A stretch of 64,000 nt of DNA from Felis catus (lineage: Eukaryota): contig NC_058369.1 of NCBI RefSeq assembly GCF_018350175.1, forward strand, positions 11,780,001 through 11,844,000, written 5' to 3'. Below, one piece after another: positions 1,996 through 60,404 of the stretch (the stretch's first letter is position 1; each line of letters starts with the position of its first letter). The notes beneath the pieces are model-generated. The model was not told where the DNA came from and ran no database searches. It was given only the letters and a program-made list of their open reading frames with translations. The position numbers and the translations under genes are program-made.

Positions 1996-2273
1996 CTCCC
2001 CAACATTCATTGAGCACTATGAGACAGGTGCCATTAAGCTTTCCTTTCCCACCTGCATTTGGAGGCTCAGAGAGGTCAAATTTACTTCACCAAGTTTACA
2101 CAGCCAGAAAGTGGCAAGGTCAGGATTTGAACCCATGGCAGTCTGATGGGAGTCTGTGCCCTAAAGCAGGAAGCTATCCATGTTACTACACAAGTATCCT
2201 CTTACCTGTTACTCTGTGTTTAAGAACCTGAAGACAAATGAACAATTTGCACTGGTGGCCAGCTGGTCTCTGT

Positions 2274-2325
2274 TTTTCATTTTTATTTTATTTTATTTCT
2301 TATTTTTTTAATGTTTATTTATTTT

Positions 2326-2368
<43 letters not shown>

Positions 2369-2533
2369 ATGGGGAGGGAGGGGCAGAGAGAGAGGGAGAC
2401 ACAGAATCTGAAACAGGCTCCAGGCTCTGAGCTGTCAGCACAGAGCCCCAAGCAGGGCTCAAACCCATAAACCCCGAGATCATGACCTGAACCGAAGGTG
2501 GATGCTCAGCTGACTGAGTCACCCAGGCACCCC
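2274..2533 (-). mobile_element. Can-SINE with expanded (GA)n
   Basis: Typical SINEC body in reverse orientation. Confidence 0.9.
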
Positions 2534-4672: not shown

Positions 4673-7551
4673 GTCCTGTACTTGTGTCTGGGCTCAGGTG
4701 GAAGACACAGGGGCGCGGTGCGGTGGAGGGAAGCAGGTGCAGGGCTCTACTCTTGGGGACAGGCTGGGTCTGAGCCACCTCTCCGTCTGCAGCTGGTGAC
4801 TCTAGCACCAGCAAGGGCTGATGGTCGTCTGGGGGACAGAGCCACTTGAACAGTGCTTGTCGGTCACCCCTGCTCAGACCCGGTGGCGAGACCCAGAAAT
4901 GCACGGGCCTGTCTGGGAGAACAGCTGAGCAGAGCTGCAAGGCTGTGGCTCAAAGCGACTTTGGTTATTGGCCGTTTATCTCCGGTGGCCACACACTCAC
5001 TGCCGGGCACACAGCAGGTGCACAGGAAATACCTGTGAGACGAAAGAAAGCAGGGTGCCCATCGTTCAAGAAAACATTTGAAATGGGCGCTGAGCGGGGA
5101 GAGGAGCTCGTGTCGACCAAGCACCTACTGAGTGCCAAGCTCTGCACACATGGTGTCTGTTATCCTCACTCAGCCCCATTTCACAGAAGAGCAGGTGAGG
5201 CCCGGAGAGGCCAAACCACTTGTCTGGGGCCACAGCGCCCTCTCCAGGCAGGGCTGCAAGATGCAGCTGAACTGAGACCTTGGTCTCCACTCCTCCTGGG
5301 GCTTGGTATTGACTCCCGTGTGCGATGTTAGCCTGGTATCCTGACCTCTCTGGCCACCCAGAAGCAGCAATAAAAGAGATTTCTCCTTCGTCCTGAGCTC
5401 ATTTCTTGGTTGACCGTGTGTGTCTCTGATGCCTTTCCCGATTTGAGTTGTGCCAGAAAATCCCCCAGATTCGCCCCACATTCTGGCTCTTCTGCTGTCC
5501 CAGTGGGATAGAGCTTAGAGGAGAGTGTTGGCTGGACCTCAGTCCAGGCTGGCACCTCCTTCCAGCCCACTCTCTCCTCCTGGGCCCTAGAGGGGCGGTC
5601 CTGCGGTGCCTCCAAGTCCCTTCACATTTTGGCTCCAGTCTGACTCCCCAGCCTCCTCTGAGCTCGTTCTGGACACTTCTCCACGCCTTGGCTCTGCTGG
5701 TTCCTCTGCCTGCCGTTCCGTCCCTGGCACCGTGTGCGGGAGACTTTTCATCCTGCAGAGTTCAGCTCAGGTGGCATGTCCCTCCTTTGTCGCCTGCACT
5801 ATGGGGTCTCACAGCACTCACTGCATGCCTTCCTTCACTGTTTTCTTTAATGCATTTTTATTGAACATTTACTATGTGCAGGAATCATTTTTGATGTTGG
5901 GAACACAGCATGGAACCAGTGAGGCACTGTCCCTGCCCTTATGATGTCACAGTGTCACGGGAGACAGCGACCCATAACCAGGTAAGGACAACACTGTATG
6001 ATAGGGGATCTCCGGGGAAGCGAGGAGTCAGAGAGGCACCAGACCCAGCCAGGAGTGGGGTAATCACGAAAGGCTTCCTGGAGGAGGTGGCAGGTGATCT
6101 GAGACCAGTTAGTTGAGGCAGATGGGAGGGAGGCATGAGGGATGTGGTGGGACCTGGGGTGAGAGTCTGGTACATTCAAGAAATTGAAAATGCTCCCATC
6201 TCATTTTAGCCTAGAGATGCAAAATGAGGGTGGTAGAATTGAAGGAGACATGTCCAATATTCAGCCCTTAGGGGAACCTGCCCTTTCTCCAGAATCCACC
6301 TGTGAGCCCAGATGAATGCCTGGCCCGTGTTTGGGGGCTCCTGCTACTACTTTTCCTCAGACAACTTTTCTGGAATCAGGCAAGTCTCCCTTGCACAGAA
6401 GGGTGTTCACCTAGTCACTACCAGTGGTCAAACATAACAGGTGGGGACAGGTGGGCCTTAGGGCCCTTCTCCAAGACAGTGCAGGGGCATGTCCTGTCCT
6501 TTGCAGGATCCATTCCAAACCCCATTGTCCAGCTTTCAGGCCCATAGCTTATCTCCCCCAAGCTCACCCAGCATGTGGACGTAACCCAACCACACAGTGT
6601 CCCATTCTCTACATTACTGGTCTCCGTCCCTATGGCAGGAATTCCTCTCCCTCTGCTATCAGCCCAGAGAAGGCCTTTTTCATCATCCTTCCAGCGCCAG
6701 GGACCACATTTCCCACGGTGACCAGCAGATGTCGCCCTCACAGCCTTGCCCCAGAGCACCATGGCTCATCCTTGCTGGGTCTGGGACTGGATGCGATATA
6801 TCTCTGTGTCCCCAGAGCCTGTAATAGTTGCTGGCACTTGGTAGAGACTCAATAGATGCCTGGTGTGGAGTTTATTGACCGAGCCACTCCCACTGGCCAG
6901 AGGGCAGTTCTCAAGTCTGGAGTTGAACATCCTGTAATAAAACTCATGGATGTAGTGTTTTTGTGGTGTTTGAGGTTTAAGAGTGCCCCCCCCCAAAATA
7001 GACATGGGGACCAGGGTTGTCCCTGGAAGGTGACAGGCACCAGAGGGGAGTGAAAAGTTTGAGACAATTCTTTCCTATGGCCAAGACCCACTTGAACTCA
7101 CTGTGGTCCTGGGGGCCTGGAGTGTTCTTTCTGGAAGCCACTGACAGTCTTGTCTGACCCCGGATAGCAGAGGAGGACTTCCCTCGAGGAATGCTTTTGA
7201 AACTGAGGCCCCCCTGTTGTTCAGGACCCAGGTAGGCGTCCTGCTTGGCCAAGTCTAGGAGTATTACTGTGCCTCTCAAAATACCCGTAGCTGTATGTAT
7301 GGGAGGCTTGTGAATCACCAGATACCATGATCTCTAAACAGAGAACATCCCTGATCGGTGGGGGATACTTATTCCCATTTTATAAATAGGGAAACTGAGG
7401 TTGATAGGTTAGGGGAGTGTATTACATGTCATCAGAGTAAATGAGTAGGAGATGTGGGGCTCTGAAAACTTTATAAAAATCATGAAAGATAAAGCACAGA
7501 CTGAAGGAACTCAGAAAATCCTAGCCGGGTGAATTCCAAACAGCATATGGA

Positions 7552-7552
<1 letters not shown>

Positions 7553-7588
<36 letters not shown>
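7553..7588. repeat. (CA)n microsatellite
   Basis: Read directly. Confidence 0.95.
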
Positions 7589-7591
<3 letters not shown>

Positions 7592-8233
7592 GCAACCTGC
7601 TGAAAACCAAAGAAAAGGAGAAAAATCATAATGGCACTCAGAGAGAAAAAGACACGTGAAATGGCACGATGTACGAACGTTTCCTAACAGTGGGTTTGGT
7701 AAATAGAAGCCTCTCCGTCAACATGAGCTTGCCTCTTCTTACCCCATCGCATTCTCCATTTAAGATGTAACATCACAAAGCCAACGTGTGGGGAAAGGAG
7801 TGGCCACGTGCTCTGAGAGAGCATAAACGTAACTCCAGTGCTGAAATTACTACAATTTTATCTCTGAGAAAATGGGGGATTTTTTGAAACAAATGGAACC
7901 AGAAGCAAATGCACCACAAACTTCGAAGCAGATTTCTGGGGCGGCTACTGTCCCCCGAACCGAGAGGGAAATGACAGCTGCAGAGAATACTTGGGACAAA
8001 ACACCTTTTCCAAGATGCTAATGCCATCTCCCGGTGGTGTGAATTGGTGATAAGCCATCTAGAGACCTTGGGGGCCTCACTGAGCCAGGAAGGAAACATC
8101 TGATGGTTTACGTGGGGGGTGGCATTTCCTAGTATAGGATGGGCGTGTCTTCAACAATAACAAGAAGGGCTGTGGGTAGCTAGACCAGAAGGAGCTGCAG
8201 CCACAGGTGAACACACGCACAGGACCTCACACC

Positions 8234-8270
8234 ATGGAAGGAAAATATCCGCCCATCCAGGGGAAACCGG
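8234..8270 (+). CDS. C-type lectin coding exon 1 (cytoplasmic tail MEGKYPPIQGKP)
   Basis: accATGG Kozak context; donor G|GTGAGT at 8271; 37 nt, phase 1 matches the next exon. Confidence 0.78.
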
Positions 8271-10624
8271 GTGAGTCAAGAGGCCCAGGGCAGGAGTAGG
8301 TGCCCTCAGTACCAGCGACGGCTCCTTGCTTTCCACTCCAGGGCACGGTTCAGGCCCATCCCTCATCCCTCCACATTCCTGGCATGATCCTGGCAGACCA
8401 TGTGCACCGCCTCATACTTGCTGCATTCCCCGCAGCACAGAGGGACCAAAGGCTGCCCCAGGATGACCCCTGGAAGTTTTTCTGCCTGGCAATGACTCTG
8501 ATGCTGCTTCTGTTCGACCTCATCCTAGGTGTGGTCCTGGCTGAGGGTAAGGTGGTGAGCCAGTGGGAAATGGGTGATCACATGGACCAAGTCTTGAGAA
8601 GCAGGCCCTACAGGGCTGGGGCAGAGATGGGTCAGTAAGGGGGTGGCTGGACTGCATCGCTGGACTTCATGATTTTAGAGGGGACCTGCCCTCCTTGTCT
8701 TAGCCTGCAGTTTGGGGAGTGGGAAAAGAACCGGGTGCTGAAAGGTCTAGAGCACATCAGCACGTGTCTCTCCTAGTACTGCTGTTCTCCAACAAGATGC
8801 AGGAAGACCTCAAGCAAATGGACATCCAATGTGAGTGCTGAACGAAACGGAGGGCTTTCTTCCCACACGCACCACCAGGTCTTGATCCGCCTTTCTCTGT
8901 GGGCCTCTTAGTTGTGCAGGGTCTGGCAGATGCTGGGCACGAGCGGGACATCGTGTGGGGAGAGGTGTTCCGGCAAACGGAAGCTGTGCGGGCAGGCAAC
9001 GGTAAGGAGGCAGGGTGGGCTGGGTGGTGGGAACTGGGAGTTGGAAGAGGACTGCTGTTGTCTTCAGCCCTGCTGATGGTAGTGGTTCTTATAACACGCG
9101 AGCGGGTGTTGGGTTGTTTTAATCGATCCTCTGTCAAGGTGGATGCCAACATAAAGTGTGAGGCCCCTTGCATGTATCACTCTGCCACCTGGTAAGGCCC
9201 GGCTCTTGCATGAACACATGGGAAGCTACTGTGCTCATCTTGGCAAAGAGGCACGGATGAACAGGTTTGGATCATTTCACCTCTGGAGGCCAGTGCAGCC
9301 TGTAGCCTCAACAGAGCTGATGTCCCTCCCCTTCTCCAGAATCCTCCTGTGAGCCCTGCCATGAAAACTGGACGGCATTTCAGGGCTCCTGCTATCAATT
9401 TTCCACACAAGAACTGAGCTGGTTCAAAGCCAAGGATCACTGTGCAGAGAAGGGTGCTCACCTGGTCATCATCAACAGCCAAGCAGAGCAGGTGAGAAGC
9501 AGGGAGGGGTGCTCTGGAGACCCGTCAAGTCATTGCAATCTCATGTCCTTGTTCCCTGTAGAATCCAGTGCAAATCCTGCATTCTGTCCTTCATAATGTC
9601 CTTCCGCTGTTTCAGCATGCAGCGTTGCCCAGTATTCAGTCCTGCTTCTGAATGATTCTTCATGGTGGCCCTTCTGTCTGGAATGCTTCCTTCTATCTAC
9701 CTGGACAGCTCCTACCTGTTCTTCATCAGATCAAACTTTGTCCTTCAGCATCCTTCCCACCCCCTCTTCCTTAATACTGGACTATGCTGCCAGATCCCTG
9801 GTTCATCTCCTTGCACATGGAGAACTTCCCGGCTAGGGGTGGTTCTGACTCATTCATGAGTCCATACTGCCTGGAACCAGATTGGACACACTCAGTATGG
9901 TTCAGCGGACTCAATGTTTGTCAGTGGAATCCAACTGATTGCCAGAACATTTTCTATGGAGTAGTGTCCAGATTCCTCACCCTGTTAACCATGCCCTTGA
10001 ATAATCCTATCTACCCTTTAACCAGGCAGTGCTCATCTAGGAGCCATACTGGGCTCTTCTTCCCTCATTGAAGTTTCAGAAAATCCTGGAAGGCACCTGC
10101 CATTGTTACCCCCATTTTACAAATGAAAAGCCTGAGGACCGTAAGTGTCCATAATTTGCTAATTACACAGGTCATAATAATGGTGGAAATGGTCATCTAC
10201 CTAGAGCTTTAAGCCAATGTGTTCAATGGCGACATTGGAGGACATCCTTGCCCATGGGGTCCCCTAGGTCTTAGTCCCTTTCATGGACTGCTTCCACTGC
10301 CATTCTCACCTCTGGATGTAGTCTTTCCTGACTTACTTTGCCTTCTTCTCATGCAGAAATTCCTGAGTCCAAAGGAAAATAATGGCTACTGGATTGGCCT
10401 CAGGAAACAATACCCAAAGGGCATTCACAAGTGGCAAGATGGCTCAGTCCCTACCTTCATGTGAGTGTCTCTGTTGGACTCAGAACACCTGAGCTTGTCC
10501 CATTGAATCTTGAAGACATCCTCCCACAGATTCTCAAATTGCCTCAAGGGTCTGATTTTGGCCTGAACCAAACTTCCTGTCATATTTCCAGTTGTCATGC
10601 TTATTGCTATTTTGTTAGCTGCAG

Positions 10625-10667
<43 letters not shown>

Positions 10668-12364
10668 CCATAATTAAACAACATTAAATAGGAAGTTCTT
10701 TATTGTAGGAAGGTCTCAGTGCCTTTAATACATTGAAGAGAATTGTACACTCTAAGGAGGGAGTAGACAGTGTGTGATGTACCAAGCTTATTGAGAGGCC
10801 CAGCTCATCTGGATATATCTGGAGCTTCTAGTGTCCTATAAAACACACCCAAGGAATCACTGCCCAGGGGATCCAGTCCTAACCCCTCCATGTATGATTC
10901 AATGACCTCACATTCTGGTCATCATCTGTTTTTGGACTTTTTTCGTGTCTACACACTTGACCAGAACCACACGCTAAGCCTCCTGGACCATCTTGAGTAC
11001 ATCTTCTCTCTTTCACTTCCACTGCTTCTGCCTCAGCTCAGGTCAGGACAATTGCTGTATATCCTGGACTTAGTCTTACCTTCATCAACCCATGCTCTAG
11101 TCAAGTTCAAGGGGCCATCTTCCTAAAACACGCCCTTGATATGCTTTTTGGAAACACCCGATTCCTCAGTGCCACATGGATAACCTAGAATCTTCAGATG
11201 GCACCTTTCAATTCCCACATAGTGGGTGCCAATTCATCTTTATACCCACATCTCCTACACTCCCAAGGGCTCTCCACCCCCTTGCCACAGCTATGTGGTA
11301 AATGACTCATCTTTTTGGATATTGTCTTGTATCTTATCTTTATGCTTTTGTTCCTGCCGTGTCATCTATCTGGAACATCTTTCACTGGCTCGTGTCAAGC
11401 TTCATAGAAGAACCCATCCTGGGCCCAGCGTGAATTAATCCAACTCCCTTAATATCCCAGTCATACCCTATGTAGAGTTTTGTAGCTGTGTTAATTATGA
11501 TCTTCCTTTGCCTATGTATGTCTTGCCCATCAGACAGGCTGCTACTTTAGGGCGGAGCAGGCTTCCAACACATGGGTGTGTCTCCAGTTTCCAGTACAGG
11601 GCTTGGTACACAGCAGGTGCACAATGAACTATATTGGAATGAATGAGTGAGTGAGTGTTATAAGCATTTCAAGAAATGTTTAGGAAAGAGAGTATAGGAT
11701 CATTTGACAGACTTGTCACATGTTATACACCAGACATTCAAATGTATCATGTTCTCAAACTTAATCTCAGAGATCCAGGGATGTTAAGTCATTTGTCTGG
11801 TTTGGCCTCATTTGTTTCATTTATAATTCAAGATTATTATTATAAAACAGATGATTACTATAAAACAGTGGTGCTCAAAAGGTGGTGGTTTCTTCCTAGA
11901 GACAACTGGCACTGCAATATTTTTGGTTGTCACAATGGAGAGTGGGTAGAGACCAGCCATGCCACTCAATGTCCTACAGTGCCCAGGATGGCCCCACACA
12001 ACAGATAATGATAAAGCTCCCGATGTAAATATTTCCTTCATGTAAACACAGTGCTGTAATATATGGTTAGGATATTTTACTTTTAGGATTACTCACATAT
12101 CCCCAAGGAAAGACCTTTGCCAGTAGCCTTATTCTCTTCTGGGATCTTGTTGGTGAGCCCAGCTGGGCATGGCTGAGTGTGGCTTGCCCAGCACTGTGGT
12201 TAAGGGACCGGGCTGATCCTTGTATTTGTTTTCACAGCAACTGGCGTGATACCAGATCTTCTCACTATGACTGTGCCTTCCTGATGGGTTCTGGCTCTTG
12301 GTCCTCTACTACATGCTATGCGTATTGGTATCATTGGATATGTGAGAAGCCACAGGTCTGCTGA
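8234..12364 (+). CDS. Intact 7-exon type II transmembrane C-type lectin, CLEC4G/LSECtin-like paralogue, 224 aa: join(8234-8270,8436-8546,8777-8830,8912-9001,9340-9491,10357-10460,12238-12364)
   Basis: Assembled by hand. Kozak accATGG at 8234; six GT-AG introns with matching phases (1,1,1,1,0,2); exon sum 675 nt = 224 codons + TGA. Protein: MEGKYPPIQGKPAQRDQRLPQDDPWKFFCLAMTLMLLLFDLILGVVLAEVLLFSNKMQEDLKQMDIQFVQGLADAGHERDIVWGEVFRQTEAVRAGNESSCEPCHENWTAFQGSCYQFSTQELSWFKAKDHCAEKGAHLVIINSQAEQKFLSPKENNGYWIGLRKQYPKGIHKWQDGSVPTFINWRDTRSSHYDCAFLMGSGSWSSTTCYAYWYHWICEKPQVC. CTLD hallmarks: 8 Cys, WIGL, W.DG, WICEK. Confidence 0.9.
8436..8546 (+). CDS. C-type lectin exon 2 (transmembrane helix)
   Basis: Acceptor ttccccgcag, donor G|GTAAGG; 111 nt phase 1-1; hydrophobic FFCLAMTLMLLLFDLILGVVLA. 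Confidence 0.88.
8777..8830 (+). CDS. C-type lectin exon 3 (neck)
   Basis: Acceptor gtctctcctag, donor T|GTGAGT; 54 nt phase 1-1; (V)LLFSNKMQEDLKQMDIQ. Confidence 0.82.
8912..9001 (+). CDS. C-type lectin exon 4 (neck, LSECtin-like helix)
   Basis: Acceptor ggcctcttag, donor G|GTAAGG; 90 nt; VQGLADAGHERDIVWGEVFRQTEAVRAGN resembles recalled human CLEC4G VTQGLAEAGRGREDVRTELFRALEAVRLQN. Confidence 0.9.
9340..9491 (+). CDS. C-type lectin exon 5 (CTLD part 1)
   Basis: Acceptor ccccttctccag, donor CAG|GTGAGA; SCEPCHENWTAFQGSCYQF...W..A.DHC...GAHLVIINS..EQ. Confidence 0.95.
10357..10460 (+). CDS. C-type lectin exon 6 (CTLD part 2)
   Basis: Acceptor cttctcatgcag, donor AT|GTGAGT; KFL...GYWIGLR...KWQDGS. 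Confidence 0.95.
10626..10661. repeat. (GT)n microsatellite in lectin intron 6
   Basis: Read directly. Confidence 0.95.
11866..12030 (+). mobile_element. MER20-like hAT DNA transposon in lectin intron 6
   Basis: cagtggtgctcaa...ggttgtcacaa...gggtagagaccag...cacaacag pattern; similar copies near 15020, 29130, 30820, 32830, 41850 and 63400. Confidence 0.7.
12238..12364 (+). CDS. C-type lectin exon 7 (CTLD part 3, stop codon)
   Basis: Acceptor tgttttcacag; phase 2 completes ATC; NW...DCAF...W...C...WICEKPQVC*. Confidence 0.93.
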
Positions 12365-12690
12365 GATGCTCCCTTTCCTCTGTCTTCAGTCTTGGGAAAG
12401 ATTGTCTTGATATGTGACCTCATAACAATTCCCCAGCTTGGCTGCAGAAAAGGGGGTCTCCTGAAAGCCCTAGTCCTCTTGGTAGCGTTGTCTCCCTTTC
12501 TTTCCCTTACTTCTAAATTTTGTTGGGGTATATGTAAAATAACACCAGGATAAAACAATGAGCAAAATATATCGTGTAGGACATTCTACAAGACAAATAA
12601 TCTAGTTTTGAAAAAAAAATGACAGAAAGGCAAATGTCATATTATTAGATATAAAATAAAATATAAATAGATAAAATAAAAGAGTCTTAA

Positions 12691-17950: not shown

Positions 17951-18886
17951 ATGGAGAATCAGACGCGAGTCTTCGAATTCATCCTCCTCGGCCTCTCCGA
18001 GCAGCCCCTACAGCAGCAGGTGCTCATTGGTGTGTCCTGCAGCCTGTATCTGATCGGATGCATGGGGAATCTGCTCACCATCCTGGCCATCCTCTTGGAC
18101 CCTCACCTCCACAGCCCCATGTACTTCTTCCTCAGCAACTTGTCTCTTCTGGACATCTGTTTTACCTCCACCACCGTCCCCAAGATGCTGGTGAACTATC
18201 TGTGCAGACACAGCACCATCTCCCCCCAGGCTTGCCTGGCACAGATGTATTTCTTCATTGCCTTTGGGGCAGCGGAAAGCATCCTTCTCTCAGTCATGGC
18301 TTATGACCGCTACCTGGCCATCTGCTGCTTGCTGCGCTACATGACGATCATGAACGTCCTTCGTTGTGCCTTGCTAGTGACCGTGCCCTGGACCTCGGCA
18401 AACCTCATCTCCATGGTCCATACCATCCTGATGACCCGCTTGTCCTTTTGCACCAATAGGACCCCACACTTTTTCTGTGACATTAATGCCTTGATCAAGC
18501 TTTCCTGCTCCAACGCGCAAGTCAACGAGATGTTGATGCTGGTCCTTGGGGGTTCGGTGGTTCTGATGTCTTTTGTGTGTATCACGGCCTCTTATACACC
18601 TATTGCTGTGGCTGTGTGAAAGGTGCCCTCAGCCCAGGGGAAGTGGAAAGCTTTCTCTACCTGTAGCTGTCACCTTTGTGTCATCTCTCTCTTCTATGGG
18701 ACTATTATTGGGGTCTACTTCAACCCTGCATCCACACACACCACCCAGAGGGACATGGTAGCCACAGTGATGTATGCCATGGTCACCCCCATGCTGAACC
18801 CCTTCATCTACAGCCTTCGGAACCGTGATCTGAAGGGTGCCCTCAGGAAACTTCTTAAAGGAAACCTCTTGGCTAAGCCTCTTTGA
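17951..18886 (+). pseudogene. Class II olfactory receptor, family 1 (probably OR1AB-like), with one in-frame premature TGA at 18617-18619
   Basis: ORFs 17951-18619 and 18623-18886 are in the same frame and together give 311 codons with OR motifs [45 protein letters not shown]. The OR1AB assignment rests on recalled synteny. Confidence 0.92.
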
Positions 18887-20089: not shown

Positions 20090-20251
20090 NNNNNNNNNNN
20101 NNNNNNNNNNNNNNNNNNNNNNNNNNNNNNNNNNNNNNNNNNNNNNNNNNNNNNNNNNNNNNNNNNNNNNNNNNNNNNNNNNNNNNNNNNNNNNNNNNNN
20201 NNNNNNNNNNNNNNNNNNNNNNNNNNNNNNNNNNNNNNNNNNNNNNNNNNN
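20090..20251. other. N gap (162 nt)
   Basis: Run of N. Confidence 0.99.
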
Positions 20252-33389: not shown

Positions 33390-33910
33390 TTTTTTTTTAT
33401 TGCCGTAGAATACGCATAACATAAAATCTGCCATTTTAGCCATTTTATAGCATACAGTTCAGTGCCATTAATTACATTCACAGTGTTGTGAACCAACCAC
33501 CTCTGTCTGGTTCCAGAGCTTTCTCATCAACCCAAAAAGAAACCCTGTGTTTGTTAGCAGTCATTCCCAANNNNNNNNNNNNNNNNNNNNNNNNNNNNNN
33601 NNNNNNNNNNNNNNNNNNNNNNNNNNNNNNNNNNNNNNNNNNNNNNNNNNNNNNNNNNNNNNNNNNNNNNNNNNNNNNNNNNNNNNNNNNNNNNNNNNNN
33701 NNNGACAATATGTGGTTTATCCATACAACAGAGTACTGGTCAACCATGGAAAAGCAACCAGGTTCTCAGAATGTTACATGCTATAACGTGGGTGAGCCTC
33801 AAAAACAGTACACAGAACGAAAGAAGCCAGACCCCAAAGGCCACATACTGTATGATTTCATTTCGATGAATGTCCAGAACAGGCAAATAGAGATGGAAAG
33901 CAGATTGGGG
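33390..33910. mobile_element. L1MB-like 3' end with two opposite-orientation parts separated by an N gap
   Basis: 33390-33570 reads as the L1 terminus on the minus strand; 33704-33910 reads as the adjacent upstream L1 segment on the plus strand. Confidence 0.7.
33571..33703. other. N gap (133 nt)
   Basis: Run of N. Confidence 0.99.
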
Positions 33911-35736: not shown

Positions 35737-36684
35737 ATGAAGAAAGGCAATTTCTCAGCAGGGACTGAATTCATCCTCGTGGGCTTCTCCACCTTCCCCC
35801 ACCTTCAGGTGATGTTCTTCCTGCTGTTCCTGCTTATGTACCTGTTCACGCTGCTGGGGAACCTGCTCATCATGGCCACAGTCTGGAGCGAGCGCAGCCT
35901 GCACACGCCCATGTACCTCTTCCTGTGCACCCTGTCCACCTCCGAGATCCTCTACACCTTGGCCATCACCCCGCGCCTGCTGGCCGACCTGCTCTCCACC
36001 CGCCACACCATCACCTGGGCGGCCTGTGCCAGCCAGATGTTTTTCTCCTTCACGTTCGGCTTCACCCACTCCTTCCTGCTCACCGTCATGGGCTACGACC
36101 GCTACGTGGCCATCTGCCACCCCCTGCGCTACAATGTGCTCATGAGCCCCCGCGGCTGTGCCTGCCTGGTGGCCTGGTCCTGGGTAGGTGGCTCGGTCAT
36201 GGGGCTGGTGGTGACCACGGCCGTTTTCCACCTCACCTTCTGTGGACCCAATGAGATCCACCATTTTGCTTGCCACGTGCCCCCTCTATTGAAGCTGGCC
36301 TGTGGAACTGATGTACCAGTAGTGGCCAAGGGCGTGGGGCTGGTGTGCATCATGGCCCTGCTGGGCTGCTGTCTCCTCATCCTCCTCTCCTATGCCTTCA
36401 TTGTGGCCGCCATCTTGAGGATCCCCTCAGCTGAGGGCCGGCACAAGGCCTTCTCCACCTGTGCATCCCACCTCACTGTGGTCATTGTGCACTACGGCTT
36501 TGCCTCTGTCATCTATCTGAAGCCCAAGGGTCCCCAGTCTCTGGAAGGAGACACCCTGATGGGCATCACCTACACGGTCCTCACCCCCTTCCTCAGCCCC
36601 ATCATCTTCAGTCTCAGGAACAAGGAGCTGAAGACTGCCATGACCAAGACCTTCCTCAACAAACTCTACCCAGAAAAAATATGA
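35737..36684 (+). CDS. OR10H1-like: Intact olfactory receptor, OR10H subfamily, 315 aa
   Basis: Single-exon ORF with LHTPMYLFL, MGYDRYVAICHPLRY, KAFSTCASHL, PFLSPIIFSLRNKE; close to recalled human OR10H1 including the C-terminal KLYPEK; splice acceptor cttcgccccag ends at 35725. Confidence 0.96.
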   Translation: MKKGNFSAGTEFILVGFSTFPHLQVMFFLLFLLMYLFTLLGNLLIMATVWSERSLHTPMYLFLCTLSTSEILYTLAITPRLLADLLSTRHTITWAACASQMFFSFTFGFTHSFLLTVMGYDRYVAICHPLRYNVLMSPRGCACLVAWSWVGGSVMGLVVTTAVFHLTFCGPNEIHHFACHVPPLLKLACGTDVPVVAKGVGLVCIMALLGCCLLILLSYAFIVAAILRIPSAEGRHKAFSTCASHLTVVIVHYGFASVIYLKPKGPQSLEGDTLMGITYTVLTPFLSPIIFSLRNKELKTAMTKTFLNKLYPEKI

Positions 36685-45129: not shown

Positions 45130-45830
45130 TCATTAGTTACCAGGGAAATACAAATCAAACCCACAATAAGATACTACTAGAATGACTATAATCAAAAAGT
45201 TAGATACATTAGCGTTGGCGAGGATGTGGAAAAACGGGAACCCGCAGAGACTGCTGGTGGGGACGTAAAATGGAGCCACCACTTTGGAAAGCAGTCTAGC
45301 AATTCCTCAAATGATTAAACATAGAGTTACCATATAACCCCTCATTTTCACTCCTAAGTACACACCTCCCAAGTGAAAATGTATGTCCACATAAAAACTT
45401 GTACATGAATGTTTATAGCAGCGTTACTCATTATNNNNNNNNNNNNNNNNNNNNNNNNNNNNNNNNNNNNNNNNNNNNNNNNNNNNNNNNNNNNNNNNNN
45501 NNNNNNNNNNNNNNNNNNNNNNNNNNNNNNNNNNNNNNNNNNNNNNNNNNNNNNNNNNNNNNNNNNNNNNNNNNNNNNNNNNNNNNNNNNNNNNNNNNNN
45601 NNNNNNNNNNNNNNNNNNNNNNNNNNNNNNNNNNATATAAAATGTTCAGAACAGGCAAATCTATAAATACAGTGCATTAGGGCTGCTTAGGGCTGAAGGG
45701 AAGAGAGGAAAGAGGGATGACACTTAAAGGCTATAAGGTTTTATTTGGAGGTGATGAAAATGTTCTAAATTGACTGATTTGGATTACACATATCTTTAAA
45801 CAGGTGAATCATATCTCAATAGAACTATTT
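45130..45830 (+). mobile_element. L1MB-like 3' region spanning N gap 45435-45634
   Basis: Colinear L1 ORF2-end/3'UTR text on both sides of the gap. Confidence 0.8.
45435..45634. other. N gap (200 nt)
   Basis: Run of N. Confidence 0.99.
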
Positions 45831-47911: not shown

Positions 47912-48871
47912 TCAGGAGCTCTGGGGATGGAGTCTTCTGAGGAAGGTCTTGGTCATGGCTGTCTTCAGCTCCTTGTTCCTGAGACTGAAGATGATGGGGC
48001 TGAAGAAGGGGGTGAGGACCGTGTAGGTGATGCCCATCAGGGTGTCTCCTTCCAGAGACTGGGGACCCTTGGGCTTGAGGTAGACGACAGAGGCAAAGCC
48101 GTAGTGCACAATGACCACAGTGAGGTGGGACGCACAGGTGGAGAAGGCCTTGTGCCGGCCCTCAGCTGAGGGGATCCTCAAGATGGCGGCCACAATGAAG
48201 GCATAGGAGAGGAGGATGAGGAGACAGCAGCCCAGCAGGGCCATGATGCACACCAGCCCCACGCCCTTGGCCACTACTGGTACATCAGTTCCACAGGCCA
48301 GCTTCACCACAGGAGGCACGTGGCAGAAAAAATGGTGGATCTCATTGGGTCCACAGAAGGTGAGGTGGAAAACGGCCGTGGTCACCAACAGCCCCATGAC
48401 CGAGCCACCTACCCAGGACCAGGCCACCAGGCAGGCACAGCCGCGGGGGCTCATGAGCACATTGTAGCGCAGGGGGTGGCAGATGGCCACGTAGCGGTCA
48501 TAGCCCATGACGGTGAGCAGGAAGGAGTGGGTGAAGCCAAACGTGAAGGAGAAAAACATCTGGCTGGCACAGGCCGCCCAGGTGATGGTGCGGCGGGTGG
48601 AGAGCAGGTCGGCCAGCAGGCGCGGGGTGATGGCCAAGGTGTAGAGGATCTCAGAGGTGGACAGGGTGCACAGGAAGAGGTACATGGGCGTGTGCAGGCT
48701 ACGCTCGCTCCAGACTGTGGCCATGATGAGCAGGTTCCCCAGCAGCGTGAACAGGTACATGAGCAGGAACAGCAGGAAGAAGGCGGGCAGGAGATGCCTT
48801 GGGAAGGTGGAGAAGCCCACGAGGATGAATTCAGACACGGAGCTGTGGTTTTGGCCCAGCGTGGCGGCCAT
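47912..48871 (-). CDS. OR10H2-like: Intact olfactory receptor, OR10H subfamily, 319 aa
   Basis: Single-exon ORF with all OR motifs; N-glycosylation sequon NHS; acceptor ctctccccacccag two bases upstream of the ATG. Exact orthologue uncertain because of gene conversion. Confidence 0.95.
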   Translation of the reverse strand: MAATLGQNHSSVSEFILVGFSTFPRHLLPAFFLLFLLMYLFTLLGNLLIMATVWSERSLHTPMYLFLCTLSTSEILYTLAITPRLLADLLSTRRTITWAACASQMFFSFTFGFTHSFLLTVMGYDRYVAICHPLRYNVLMSPRGCACLVAWSWVGGSVMGLLVTTAVFHLTFCGPNEIHHFFCHVPPVVKLACGTDVPVVAKGVGLVCIMALLGCCLLILLSYAFIVAAILRIPSAEGRHKAFSTCASHLTVVIVHYGFASVVYLKPKGPQSLEGDTLMGITYTVLTPFFSPIIFSLRNKELKTAMTKTFLRRLHPQSS

Positions 48872-58997: not shown

Positions 58998-59948
58998 TCA
59001 GGAGCTTAAGGGACTAAATTTTTTCCAGAAGCTTTTCTTTATGGCATTCTTGAGCTCCTTATTCCTGAGACTGAAAATGATCGGGCTGAGAAAGGGGGTG
59101 AAGACTGTATAGGTGGTGGCCATCAGGGTGTTACTGTCCATAGAATGGGGGCCCTTGGGCTTGAGGTAGATAATGGAGGCAAAGCCATAGTGCACAATGA
59201 CCACAGTGAGGTGGGACACACACGTGGAGAAGGTCTTGTGCCTGCCCTCAGCAGAGGGGATCCGCAATATGGCGGCCACGATGAAGACATAGGAGAGGAC
59301 GATGAGGAATAAACAACCCATCAGAGCTGAGACACATACTAGGATCACACCCAAGGTGACAGAGGATGTCTCCTTCCCACAGGTCAACTTTAGAAGGGAA
59401 AGCACGTGGCAGGCAAAATGGTGGATCACATTAGACCCACAGAAGGTGAGGTGAAAAACTATCAGCGTCAACATTATCCCCATGACTGAGCCACCAACCC
59501 AGAACCAAGACACAAGGCGGGCACAGCCACGGTTGCTCATGAGCACATTGTAGCGCAGGGGGTGGCAGATGGCCACGTAGCGGTCGTAGCCCATGATCAT
59601 GAGCAGGAAGGAGTGTGTGAAGCCAAACGTGAAGGAGAAAAACATCTGGCTGGCACAGGCCATCCAGGTGATGGTGCGGTGGGTGGAGAGCATGTCAACC
59701 AGCATGCGAGGGGTGACGGCAACGGTGAACAGAATCTCGGAGGTAGACAGGGCGCAAAGGAAGAGGTACATGGGCGTGTGCAGGCTGCGCTCGCTCCAGA
59801 CCGTGGCCATGATGAGCAGGTTCCCCAGCAGCGTGAACAGGTACATGAGCAGGTACAGCAAGAAGAAAGCAGGCAGGAGATGCCGTGGGAAGTTAGAGAA
59901 TCCCACAAGGATGAACTCAGTCACCACGCTGTAGTTCTGACCAGGCAC
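58998..59948 (-). CDS. OR10H3/4-like: Olfactory receptor, OR10H3/OR10H4-like, 316 codons open, but the conserved start codon is GTG (functional status uncertain)
   Basis: No internal stops. VPGQNYS aligns with recalled MPGQNY/MPSQNYS of human OR10H3/4; motifs CHVLSLLKL, KTFSTCVSHL, MATTYTVFTPFLSPIIFSLRNKELKNAI. The ORF-track extension to 60053 runs through a polypyrimidine tract and AG, so it is probably intronic. Confidence 0.8.
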   Translation of the reverse strand: MPGQNYSVVTEFILVGFSNFPRHLLPAFFLLYLLMYLFTLLGNLLIMATVWSERSLHTPMYLFLCALSTSEILFTVAVTPRMLVDMLSTHRTITWMACASQMFFSFTFGFTHSFLLMIMGYDRYVAICHPLRYNVLMSNRGCARLVSWFWVGGSVMGIMLTLIVFHLTFCGSNVIHHFACHVLSLLKLTCGKETSSVTLGVILVCVSALMGCLFLIVLSYVFIVAAILRIPSAEGRHKTFSTCVSHLTVVIVHYGFASIIYLKPKGPHSMDSNTLMATTYTVFTPFLSPIIFSLRNKELKNAIKKSFWKKFSPLSS

Positions 59949-60404
59949 GGGTGCTGCATCTGGTGAGATCAGAAAGGGAATGAAGGTGTGTACTTTATCC
60001 CATGAATAACAAAGATGATTCAGTGTCAGAAAACCTATCATGTGATCAGTCACAGGAATAAACTAAAATAAATATCATATAATTATATCAATTCAGGCAG
60101 CAATCCTGGATTGCTAAAGTTTGATTACTGTTTATGATTTTAAAAATTAATACATAATTATCAAAAATATTGTATTATTTTAGATATACAGTATATCTGT
60201 ATACTGTATATACTGTATATACAGTATTATTTTAGATATACAGTATATCTGTATATCTGTGTACATATTGATATATGTACACATCTTAAAGATTTTTTAG
60301 AAGTTTCTTCTAAATATGAAATCAACTGGACTTTTCTTAGATAACTAAGAATATACACTAGAAAACTAGCAAGAAGTGGGAGAAAATAGATGCACTATTT
60401 TAAA

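What the first reader, a model, noticed from the sequence alone, without database searches (positions are those of the whole stretch)
8234..12364. Hidden intact LSECtin-like receptor gene inside an olfactory-receptor neighbourhood
Seen: a complete 224-aa reading frame across seven small exons that no single ORF reveals. Recalled knowledge: human CLEC4G has internal exons of 111, 54 and 90 nt like exons 2, 3 and 4 here, and the same 8-Cys CTLD ending in WICEK...C. CLEC4G itself sits in the FCER2/CD209 cluster, not next to OR10H genes. I recall the human OR10H/CYP4F region carrying the pseudogene CLEC4O. Inference: this is a separate, uncharacterised LSECtin paralogue, possibly the functional counterpart of a gene lost in humans, and so a candidate immune or endothelial receptor retained in cats.
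Basis: partly seen in the sequence, partly recalled or inferred. Interest (0 to 1): 0.85.

Follow-up and report, generated by a model that had tools for sequence, protein, structure and literature searches.

The report
Sugar-blind LSECtin paralogue gene in cat
This is a real, intact seven-exon cat gene for a small membrane protein of the C-type lectin family, a relative of LSECtin (CLEC4G) that has lost its calcium and sugar-binding residues. Genome databases already list it as "CLEC4G-like", but nobody has studied its function.

Summary
Seven GT-AG exons at 8234-12364 (+) join into a 675-nt frame for a 224-aa type II membrane protein with an 8-cysteine C-type lectin-like domain.

It is not hidden. 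RefSeq already models it in Felis catus and at least 12 other carnivores as "C-type lectin domain family 4 member G-like".

It is not the CLEC4G orthologue. Cat has an intact CLEC4G with EPN and WND motifs 5.7 Mb away, between CD209 and FCER2.

The gene belongs to a separate eutherian lineage (A). That lineage is also intact in armadillo. A sister-like paralogue (B) lies 142 kb away, and both sit among OR10H-type olfactory receptor genes next to a P450 gene.

Lineage A has lost every canonical Ca2+/sugar ligand: EPN is deleted, the Glu of EDC is Tyr, and WND is WSS. The predicted fold is still a good CTLD, closest to CD23.

Selection is mixed. The CTLD core is constrained (omega 0.51, p = 0.02). 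The last exon evolves at about the neutral rate (1.14), and the whole gene gives 0.77, not significantly below 1. The frame has nevertheless stayed open across Carnivora.

RNA support is thin: 15 reads in one run, with an edge at the exon 7 acceptor.

Best reading: a conserved, weakly expressed, non-sugar-binding lectin-like receptor. Orthology to human CLEC4OP could not be tested. This scan noted the same stretch once before (s1-162490).

The parts
8234..8270 (+). Exon 1: start codon (ACCATGG context) and the first 12 codons of the short cytoplasmic tail
   Evidence: donor GT at 8271. The same 37-nt exon is found in jaguar and hyena, and it is 43 nt in sea otter.
8436..8546 (+). Exon 2 (111 nt): the rest of the tail and the single hydrophobic transmembrane segment. 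It holds no Lys or Arg. The internal Met32 is the start of RefSeq isoform X2.
   Evidence: The 111-nt size is conserved in jaguar, hyena and otter.
8777..8830 (+). Exon 3 (54 nt): membrane-proximal neck
   Evidence: Paralogue B also has a 54-nt exon here.
8912..9001 (+). Exon 4 (90 nt): neck segment with the family motif (GLADAGH.RD....E.FRQ.EA.RAGN). It ends at a conserved N-E-S glycosylation sequon.
   Evidence: A homologous 90-nt exon is present in paralogue B and in cat CLEC4G.
9340..9491 (+). Exon 5 (152 nt): first third of the C-type lectin-like domain (Cys 1-4, first helix)
   Evidence: Pfam Lectin_C match and PDB CTLD hits. It is 100% identical to its own place in G000 and 66% to paralogue B. 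Exons 5-6 together give omega 0.51.
10357..10460 (+). Exon 6 (104 nt): middle of the domain with the YWIGL core motif
   Evidence: RNA reads fall in this bin only on the sense orientation in X37.
12238..12364 (+). Exon 7 (127 nt): last third of the domain and the TGA stop. This is the region that normally holds EPN, the Glu of EDC and WND. Here it is shortened by 4 residues and reads NWRD...YDC...WSS...WICEKPQVC.
   Evidence: RNA depth is 6.9 in bin 12239-12395 against 0.01 in the bin before it. Omega is 1.14.
12365..12660 (+). Probable 3' UTR up to the first AATAAA (12655-12660). This part is inferred.
   Evidence: The AATAAA scan is. X37 reads continue into bin 12396-12552. The end of the transcript was not seen.

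Best explanation
The stretch is an intact protein-coding gene. RefSeq already predicts it as 'C-type lectin domain family 4 member G-like'.

It encodes a 224-aa type II membrane protein with four parts: a tail of about 25 aa without ITIM, ITAM or hemITAM motifs; one transmembrane helix without a basic residue; a short two-exon neck; and one long-form C-type lectin-like domain.

It belongs to an old eutherian paralogue lineage of LSECtin/CLEC4G, here called A. That lineage sits with a second paralogue (B) in the CYP4F-OR10H region. It is retained in Carnivora and Xenarthra and was not found annotated in primates or rodents.

The domain keeps the CTLD scaffold but has lost all five canonical ligands of the sugar-binding Ca2+ site. 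It therefore cannot work as LSECtin does. Most likely it is a Ca2+-independent lectin-like receptor or receptor subunit that recognises a non-glycan, probably protein, ligand through its fast-evolving C-terminal face. CD23 and the NK-type CTLDs work this way.

Shown here: the gene structure, its identity with RefSeq models, its paralogy, the loss of motifs, the fold, and conservation of the open frame. Inferred: surface expression, the type of ligand, oligomerisation through the neck, and any signalling partner.
For: - **Gene model and identity:** (P0172 is identical over 193 aa).
- **Orthologues:** proteins of 224-226 aa (a few gene models differ in length) occur in jaguar, lynx, cheetah, hyena, meerkat, fox, panda, sea otter and mink, and a 240-aa one in armadillo.
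- **Exon sizes:** conserved in jaguar, hyena and otter.
- **True CLEC4G:** intact elsewhere in the cat genome.
- **Tree:** the A clade has 100/99 support, the CLEC4G clade 100/97, and A+B 96/90.
- **Motif loss:** CLEC4G, marsupial and monotreme proteins keep EPN, EDC and WND. Lineage A has a 4-residue deletion in place of EPN, YDC for EDC, and WSS or WFS for WND.
- **Fold:** the AF2 model has pLDDT 88.6. Its best PDB match is the CD23 lectin domain, TM 0.85-0.87.
- **Domain match:** Pfam Lectin_C at 66 bits.
- **Constraint on the core:** exons 5-6 give omega 0.51, p = 0.023 against 1. Pairwise NG86 omega is 0.38-0.60, with bootstrap intervals that reach at most 1.00.
- **Open frame:** 10-15 stop codons would be expected under neutrality on the five-species tree, and none is seen (P about 1e-5 to 1e-7). 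The only indel among these five coding sequences apart from the start is one in-frame codon loss.
- **RNA:** sense-strand reads on exons 6 and 7 with a sharp edge at the exon 7 acceptor.
Against: - Whole-gene ML omega is 0.77 and is not significantly below 1 (2dlnL = 2.0).
- Exon 7 gives 1.14 and exons 1-4 give 0.83, neither different from neutral. This would also fit relaxed constraint after loss of the sugar site.
- Expression evidence is very thin. There were 15 reads in one run, none in two poly(A)/oligo-dT runs, and no splice joint passed the tool's threshold.
- No cat RNA-seq contig set in the index held exon 5.
- Minks have lost the conserved Trp before ICEK.
- The hippopotamus protein is partial, and one unnamed A-like protein (P0200) has lost a Cys.
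- The species used were found through annotated proteins, so lineages with a broken copy would be missed.
- No ligand, partner or cell type is known.
Confidence: 0.62

Rival explanations
1. The gene is decaying under relaxed constraint. After it lost its sugar site it became dispensable. Its frame is still open in carnivores, but it is drifting towards the pseudogene state already reached in other mammals.
For: Whole-gene omega is 0.77, not significantly below 1. Exon 7 gives 1.14. The lineage was not found as a protein in primates, rodents, bats or most ungulates. The hippopotamus copy is partial, and P0200 carries damaging changes. Minks have lost the core Trp. Expression is very low or absent in three of four runs.
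Against: The frame, all splice sites, all 8 Cys and the WIGL core are kept across feliforms and caniforms, and in armadillo. About 10-15 stops would be expected if the sequence were neutral, and none is seen. The CTLD core is significantly constrained. The stem branch leading to clade A is long, but branches within clade A are shorter and regular.
Confidence: 0.22
2. It is still a glycan-binding lectin but uses a non-canonical, Ca2+-independent site, as Dectin-1 does for beta-glucan. The conserved aromatic run near the C-terminus (YWYHW) would form the sugar-stacking surface.
For: The CTLD fold is intact. Aromatic residues are conserved or enriched in exon 7 across lineage A. Note s1-162490 of this scan raised the same idea.
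Against: There is no direct evidence. Part of the aromatic run replaces residues that are buried core positions in other CTLDs (the W of WICE). Exon 7 is the least constrained part of the gene.
Confidence: 0.1
3. It is the true cat orthologue of CLEC4G (LSECtin), moved to a new place in the genome.
For: NCBI names it 'CLEC4G-like', and its nearest named relatives are CLEC4G proteins. It shares the 90-nt neck exon motif with CLEC4G.
Against: An intact CLEC4G with EPN and WND lies at the canonical place between CD209 and FCER2. That gene groups with carnivore CLEC4G at 99/96, whereas the window gene does not.
Confidence: 0.01

Closest known systems
CLEC4G / LSECtin (group II C-type lectin receptor of liver and lymph-node sinusoidal endothelium)
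   Same: Both are type II membrane proteins with a single long-form CTLD of 8 Cys encoded by three exons. Both have a homologous 90-nt neck exon with the motif LA.AG.DR..I....FR..EA, and both end ICEK...C. CLEC4G is the nearest named family by profile search. The two genes lie on the same chromosome.
   Different: The window gene forms a separate clade and sits at a separate locus 5.7 Mb away in the CYP4F-OR10H region. It is 224 aa against about 290-300 aa, with a much shorter neck. It lacks EPN, the Glu of EDC and WND, and has a 4-residue shorter loop. It lacks the insertion after WLGL that eutherian CLEC4G carries. Identity to CLEC4G is only 34-41%.
Paralogue B: 'CLEC4G' or 'CLEC4G-like' proteins of 242 aa in carnivores (for example P0189 leopard, P0185 wolf). 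In cat it lies at C2:11,928,994-11,935,454 (-).
   Same: B has the same seven-exon plan (82/108/54/90/152/104/139 nt against 37/111/54/90/152/104/127). It sits in the same OR cluster 142 kb away. It groups with A at 96/90 support. Its WND is also lost and its EPN is degenerate.
   Different: Identity is only 45-46%. B keeps the full loop length with remnants of the site (EPH, ELH or KLH). It evolves more slowly: cat-mink omega is 0.29 against 0.50 for A between cat and the European mink. The AU test does not exclude other placements of A.
CD23 / FCER2 lectin domain (best structural match)
   Same: It is the best Foldseek match, with TM 0.85-0.87 and 36% identity. It is a group II type II receptor from the neighbouring cluster. 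By established knowledge, human CD23 binds a protein (IgE-Fc) without needing sugar.
   Different: It is a different subfamily and served as an outgroup in the tree. CD23 keeps EPN- and WND-type residues in cat and has a long coiled-coil stalk.
NK-type C-type lectin-like receptors (NKG2D, CD69, CLEC2, Dectin-1)
   Same: These are CTLDs without the Ca2+/sugar site that bind protein or other non-canonical ligands. The window protein gives significant sequence matches to them. This is a resemblance in how it may work, not membership.
   Different: They are encoded in the NK gene complex (cat contig C16), not in the CLEC4G lineage. They signal through defined motifs or adaptors, for which no counterpart is visible here.
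Human CLEC4OP (CLEC4O pseudogene)
   Same: A SNP table places it at chr19:15,856,586 (PMC12559834). From my own recall this is inside the human CYP4F-OR10H region. That matches the cat arrangement: P450 gene, then gene A, then an OR10H1-like pseudogene.
   Different: The one ape protein seen (gorilla P0212) is B-type and truncated. Its locus was withheld and I did not pursue it.

Membership tests
C-type lectin-like domain superfamily (Pfam PF00059) | Significant match to the Lectin_C profile | tested here: met
   P0172, which is identical to residues 32-224, scores 66.1 bits (E = 5.7e-18) against a cut-off of 22.6. Single exons score weakly.
C-type lectin-like domain superfamily (Pfam PF00059) | CTLD fold with conserved disulfide cysteines and the WIGL core | tested here: met
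   All 8 Cys and YWIGL are invariant in the A-type proteins that cover them. The AF2 model has pLDDT 88.6 and matches the CD23 CTLD at TM 0.85-0.87.
Group II type II transmembrane CTLD receptors (DC-SIGN / CD23 / LSECtin group) | N-terminal tail, single TM segment, neck, and one C-terminal CRD split over three exons | tested here: met
   The CRD exon plan of three exons, with a first CRD exon of about 150 nt, was also found for CD209, FCER2, CLEC4G and B in cat. Membrane topology is inferred from the sequence only.
CLEC4G (LSECtin) orthologue group | Groups inside the CLEC4G clade | tested here: not met
   The window gene is in clade A (100/99). Cat CLEC4G is inside the CLEC4G clade (100/97), with the other carnivores at 99/96.
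CLEC4G (LSECtin) orthologue group | Position between CD209 and FCER2 | tested here: not met
   That position (C2:6.0736-6.0765 Mb) is held by another intact gene. The window lies at C2:11.78-11.84 Mb.
Ca2+-dependent carbohydrate-binding C-type lectins | EPN or QPD tripeptide, the Glu before the third Cys, and the WND motif (the ligands of the Ca2+ site that holds the sugar) | tested here: not met
   The alignment shows EPN removed by a 4-residue deletion, EDC changed to YDC, and WND changed to WSS in cat (WFS or WLS in other species). The loss is shared by all A-type proteins that include the last exon.
Ca2+-dependent carbohydrate-binding C-type lectins | Measured Ca2+-dependent glycan binding | not testable with these tools
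   This needs recombinant protein and a glycan array.
ITIM, ITAM or adaptor-coupled CTLD receptors | A conserved tyrosine motif in the tail, or a basic residue in the TM segment | tested here: not met
   The only tail Tyr (YPPI in cat) is absent in fox, otter, mink and cheetah. No Lys or Arg lies in the hydrophobic segment.
Orthologue of human CLEC4OP | Reciprocal best sequence match and shared flanking genes | not testable with these tools
   Only a chromosome coordinate from a paper is available. No human sequence is at hand, and the gorilla locus was withheld.

The most novel reading that the evidence does not exclude
A and its neighbour B are a carnivore- and xenarthran-retained pair of LSECtin-derived receptors that no longer bind sugar. 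They work together, for example as a hetero-oligomer through their homologous necks, to recognise a fast-evolving protein ligand such as a pathogen surface protein or an immune-cell counter-receptor. Primates and rodents would then have lost this recognition system.
Probability: 0.1. Interest if true: 0.6.

Novelty: new member of a known kind. Interest (0 to 1): 0.33.

Why it matters
C-type lectin receptor families differ between species, and such differences shape how hosts see pathogens. Cats and other carnivores keep two extra LSECtin-derived genes that were not found as annotated proteins in rodents, while the one ape protein seen is truncated. The copy studied here has given up the sugar site, so automatic labels such as "CLEC4G-like" would mislead anyone who infers mannose or GlcNAc binding from the name. 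If it is expressed on endothelial or myeloid cells, it could be a carnivore-specific receptor relevant to feline and canine infections. It also offers a natural example of a lectin domain re-used for another ligand. The practical value for now is modest: a correct placement of the gene family (CLEC4G, A and B) and a testable prediction of no Ca2+-dependent glycan binding.

Tried and rejected
- **Protein search with the spliced protein:** not possible, because there is no reference for the joined sequence. I searched exon 5 alone against the representative library. That search gave the sea otter orthologue P0080, from which I reached the family.
- **Most representative hits:** these were multi-CTLD proteins and of no use as outgroups. 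I rebuilt outgroup CRDs from the cat genome instead. The CLEC17A CRD is probably missing a few residues.
- **RNA runs that hold the stretch:** these were gut metatranscriptomes or probable DNA runs that also hold the introns, so they say nothing about splicing.
- **The single read-laying run:** it gave no reads in X42 and X40 and only 6 and 15 reads in X38 and X37. No joint passed the threshold.
- **The look-up of encoding contigs:** it found nothing for P0151, P0156 and P0187. It gave no DNA for armadillo. The gorilla locus was withheld and I did not pursue it. The marsupial locus showed no neighbours within 10 kb, so marsupial synteny stays open.
- **First spliced-alignment script:** it produced spurious mini-exons, and I rewrote it.
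- **Deep branching order** of CLEC4G, A, B and the marsupial genes: not resolved. AU tests do not reject G+A+B as one clade (p = 0.41) or A+G (p = 0.33).
- **Literature:** searches for CLEC4O, CLEC4OP, CLEC4G-like and CLEC4G with OR10H1 gave only gene lists or nothing.
- **N runs:** the stretches at 20090-20251, 33571-33703 and 45435-45634 were left untouched.


Full report
**1. The observation**

Reading the window and joining the proposed exons in a script gives seven exons:

| Exon | Coordinates (+) | Length (nt) |
|---|---|---|
| 1 | 8234-8270 | 37 |
| 2 | 8436-8546 | 111 |
| 3 | 8777-8830 | 54 |
| 4 | 8912-9001 | 90 |
| 5 | 9340-9491 | 152 |
| 6 | 10357-10460 | 104 |
| 7 | 12238-12364 | 127 |

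Every intron starts GT and ends AG after a pyrimidine-rich tract. The ATG sits in ACCATGG. The joined frame is 675 nt, giving 224 aa and a TGA stop.

The product has a short N-terminal tail, one hydrophobic segment, a short neck with an N-E-S sequon, and a domain with 8 Cys that ends WICEKPQVC. Exons 5 and 6 match Pfam Lectin_C on their own. Exon 5 matches many solved CTLDs.

**2. It is a known gene model, not a hidden gene**

Exon 5 alone, scored against 1.8 billion representative proteins, found a 226-aa protein with 80% identity over the exon (P0080). A search from that protein and then from an alignment returned "C-type lectin domain family 4 member G-like" proteins. They come from sea otter, American mink, European mink, giant panda, red fox, spotted hyena, meerkat, jaguar, lynx and other cats.

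The 90% cluster of the jaguar protein holds XP_044903548.1, "CLEC4G-like isoform X2 [Felis catus]" (P0172, 193 aa). That protein is identical to residues 32-224 of my model. So the window is domestic cat, and the gene is already predicted in RefSeq with several isoforms.

I found no paper on it.

**3. What it is related to**

A six-frame search of the cat genome with exon 5 found a closer copy 142 kb away, at C2:11,931,754-11,931,903 on the minus strand (66% identity). It also found weaker matches in three known lectin regions.

With a ferret CLEC4G protein as query, all exons of a cat CLEC4G appear at C2:6,073,645-6,076,476. This gene is intact and has EPN and WND. It lies between a CD209-like gene at 6.046 Mb and an FCER2-like gene at 6.099 Mb. 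The canonical locus is therefore occupied.

The nearby copy, called B here, is intact in cat. It corresponds to 242-aa proteins that NCBI names "CLEC4G" or "CLEC4G-like" in leopard, wolf, fox, hyena, mink and bear.

I built a maximum-likelihood tree of 49 CRDs (131 columns). Cat CD209, FCER2, CLEC17A and three ASGR-type CRDs served as outgroups. The main results are:

- Eutherian CLEC4G forms one clade (100/97), and cat CLEC4G sits among the other carnivores (99/96).
- The window gene falls in clade A (100/99). This clade also holds an armadillo protein, an unnamed protein (P0177), and an anteater fragment.
- B forms its own clade (99/96) that includes an anteater protein.
- A and B group together (96/90), next to the marsupial and then the monotreme "CLEC4G" proteins.

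The deeper order is not secure. AU tests do not reject a single eutherian clade of G+A+B (p = 0.41), or even A+G (p = 0.33).

What is secure is that A is a lineage of its own. It is at least as old as the split between Xenarthra and Laurasiatheria, and it is not the CLEC4G orthologue.

**4. Neighbourhood**

Inside the window, an OR gene starts 5.6 kb downstream of the stop codon (17951-18883). It is 88% identical to the hyena gene at the same relative position. In cat it carries one in-frame stop at codon 223, so it is a pseudogene in this assembly. Three more OR frames follow in the window.

A Puma gene model named "olfactory receptor 10H1-like" (539 aa) sits in the lectin's own protein cluster. 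It is most likely a read-through chimera.

About 20 kb upstream of the window start there is a P450 exon (L049). B is flanked by OR genes on both sides.

A SNP table in PMC12559834 assigns chr19:15,856,586 to CLEC4O.

Whether CLEC4OP is A-type or B-type could not be tested. The only ape protein found (gorilla, 174 aa, no TM segment, truncated) is B-type. Its locus was withheld, and I left it there.

**5. The binding site is gone**

I compared the end of the domain across the groups:

| Group | State of the Ca2+/sugar-site motifs |
|---|---|
| Eutherian CLEC4G, marsupial and monotreme proteins | EPN, the Glu of EDC, and WND are all kept |
| B | Loop length kept; EPN reads EPH, ELH, ELP or KLH; WND is lost |
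| A (cat, other carnivores, armadillo) | Four residues missing where EPN should be; YDC in place of EDC; WSS, WFS or WLS in place of WND |

By established knowledge of C-type lectins, these residues hold the Ca2+ ion that binds the sugar. A canonical LSECtin-type activity is therefore excluded on sequence grounds.

The scaffold is kept. All 8 Cys, YWIGL and other core residues are invariant. An AlphaFold2 model of residues 93-224 has mean pLDDT 88.6 and pTM 0.82. Its best PDB matches are CD23 lectin domains (TM 0.85-0.87, 36% identity). I found no LSECtin structure in the PDB copy.

The tail has no conserved tyrosine motif, and the membrane segment has no basic residue. No signalling route can therefore be read from the sequence.

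**6. Is it maintained by selection?**

I extracted coding sequences from genomic loci of jaguar, hyena, sea otter and European mink. All are open, and the exon sizes are the same. The only length changes are at the start codon and one lost codon in the European mink.

| Measure | Result |
|---|---|
| Pairwise NG86 dN/dS | 0.38-0.60 for all pairs except otter-mink (0.86); in the three pairs bootstrapped, the 95% interval tops out at 0.59-1.00 |
| Whole gene, codon model | omega 0.77; 2dlnL = 2.0 against omega = 1, not significant |
| Exons 5-6 (CTLD core) | omega 0.51; p = 0.023 |
| Exon 7 | omega 1.14; not significant |
| Exons 1-4 | omega 0.83; not significant |
| Paralogue B, cat against American mink | omega 0.29 |

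Separately, 5.1% of random substitutions in this frame would create a stop codon. With the synonymous tree length of these five species, 10-15 stops would be expected under neutrality, and none is seen (P about 1e-5 to 1e-7). No frameshift is seen either.

One caveat applies. I found these species through annotated proteins, so broken copies in other lineages would be missed. Even so, a single cat-otter comparison already predicts several stops.

My reading is that the protein is kept. Its scaffold is under purifying selection, and its former ligand face changes fast. That could be relaxation or diversifying pressure, and the present data cannot tell which.

**7. RNA**

Runs that hold the whole stretch also hold its introns, and are gut metatranscriptomes or probable DNA.

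Two runs gave no read. X38 gave 6 reads, none on an exon in sense orientation. X37 gave 15 reads:

- Depth is 6.9 in bin 12239-12395 and 1.1 in the next bin.
- Depth is 0.01 in the bin that ends at 12238.
- Depth is 0.5 over exon 6.
- All of these are in the orientation expected for a plus-strand RNA in a standard stranded library.
- Three reads lie only partly on the stretch.

This fits spliced use of the exon 7 acceptor, but it is below the tool's threshold for a joint. It is weak evidence of low expression in one sample of unknown tissue.

**8. Verdict**

The sequence observation is confirmed. It is wrong to call the gene hidden or LSECtin-like in function.

The most likely mechanism is a non-sugar-binding lectin-like receptor or receptor subunit (confidence about 0.6). 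The main rival is a dispensable gene under relaxed constraint (about 0.2). It is a new, uncharacterised member of a well-known kind of receptor, and interest is moderate to low.

Noticed in passing
window 17951-18883 (+): An OR10H1-like olfactory receptor gene lies 5.6 kb downstream of the lectin. It is 88% identical to the intact hyena gene at the same relative position. In cat it has a single in-frame stop at codon 223 (about 18617-18619), so it is a pseudogene or a segregating null in this assembly.
   Followed up: partly
window 35737-36684 (+), 47912-48871 (-), 58998-60053 (-): Three further full-length olfactory receptor frames match Pfam 7tm_4 at E = 1e-50 or better. They are only about 39% identical to the OR next to the lectin.
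   Followed up: partly
G000:C2:11928994-11935454 (-), loci L002 and L032: A second intact LSECtin-derived paralogue (B, 242 aa, exons 82/108/54/90/152/104/139 nt) lies 142 kb from the window gene and is flanked by OR genes. NCBI names it 'CLEC4G' in some felids, which could be confused with the true CLEC4G at 6.07 Mb.
   Followed up: partly
L049 (G000:C2:11760001-11770000), about 2090-2527 (+): An open frame with a P450 match (PF00067, E = 1.6e-17) lies about 18 kb upstream of the window start. The lectin therefore sits between a CYP4F-type gene and the OR genes.
   Followed up: partly
P0174 (Puma concolor, 539 aa): A RefSeq model named 'olfactory receptor 10H1-like' falls in the same 90% cluster as the lectin. 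It is probably a chimeric read-through model joining the lectin and the next OR gene.
   Followed up: no
P0212 (gorilla, 174 aa): A gorilla protein named CLEC4G is B-type, lacks a transmembrane segment and is truncated before the end of the domain. Apes may keep only a remnant of B. The locus was withheld and I did not pursue it.
   Followed up: no
L040 (Mustela lutreola) exon 7; P0151 (Neovison vison): In both minks the Trp before ICEK, which is otherwise conserved, is lost: one codon is deleted in M. lutreola and it is Ser in N. vison. This may be a sign of weaker constraint in that lineage.
   Followed up: no
window 8157-9098 and 11297-11767: A few RNA reads lie across introns 1-4 in both orientations (X37, X38). 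In X38 there is a small pile (depth about 3) inside intron 6 in the antisense-type orientation. These could be unspliced RNA, antisense transcription, a repeat, or DNA carry-over.
   Followed up: no
window 10616-10672 and about 7480-7610: There are (TG)n/(CA)n microsatellites in intron 6 and upstream of the gene. The read tool skipped the first as a repeat.
   Followed up: no
   Followed up: no
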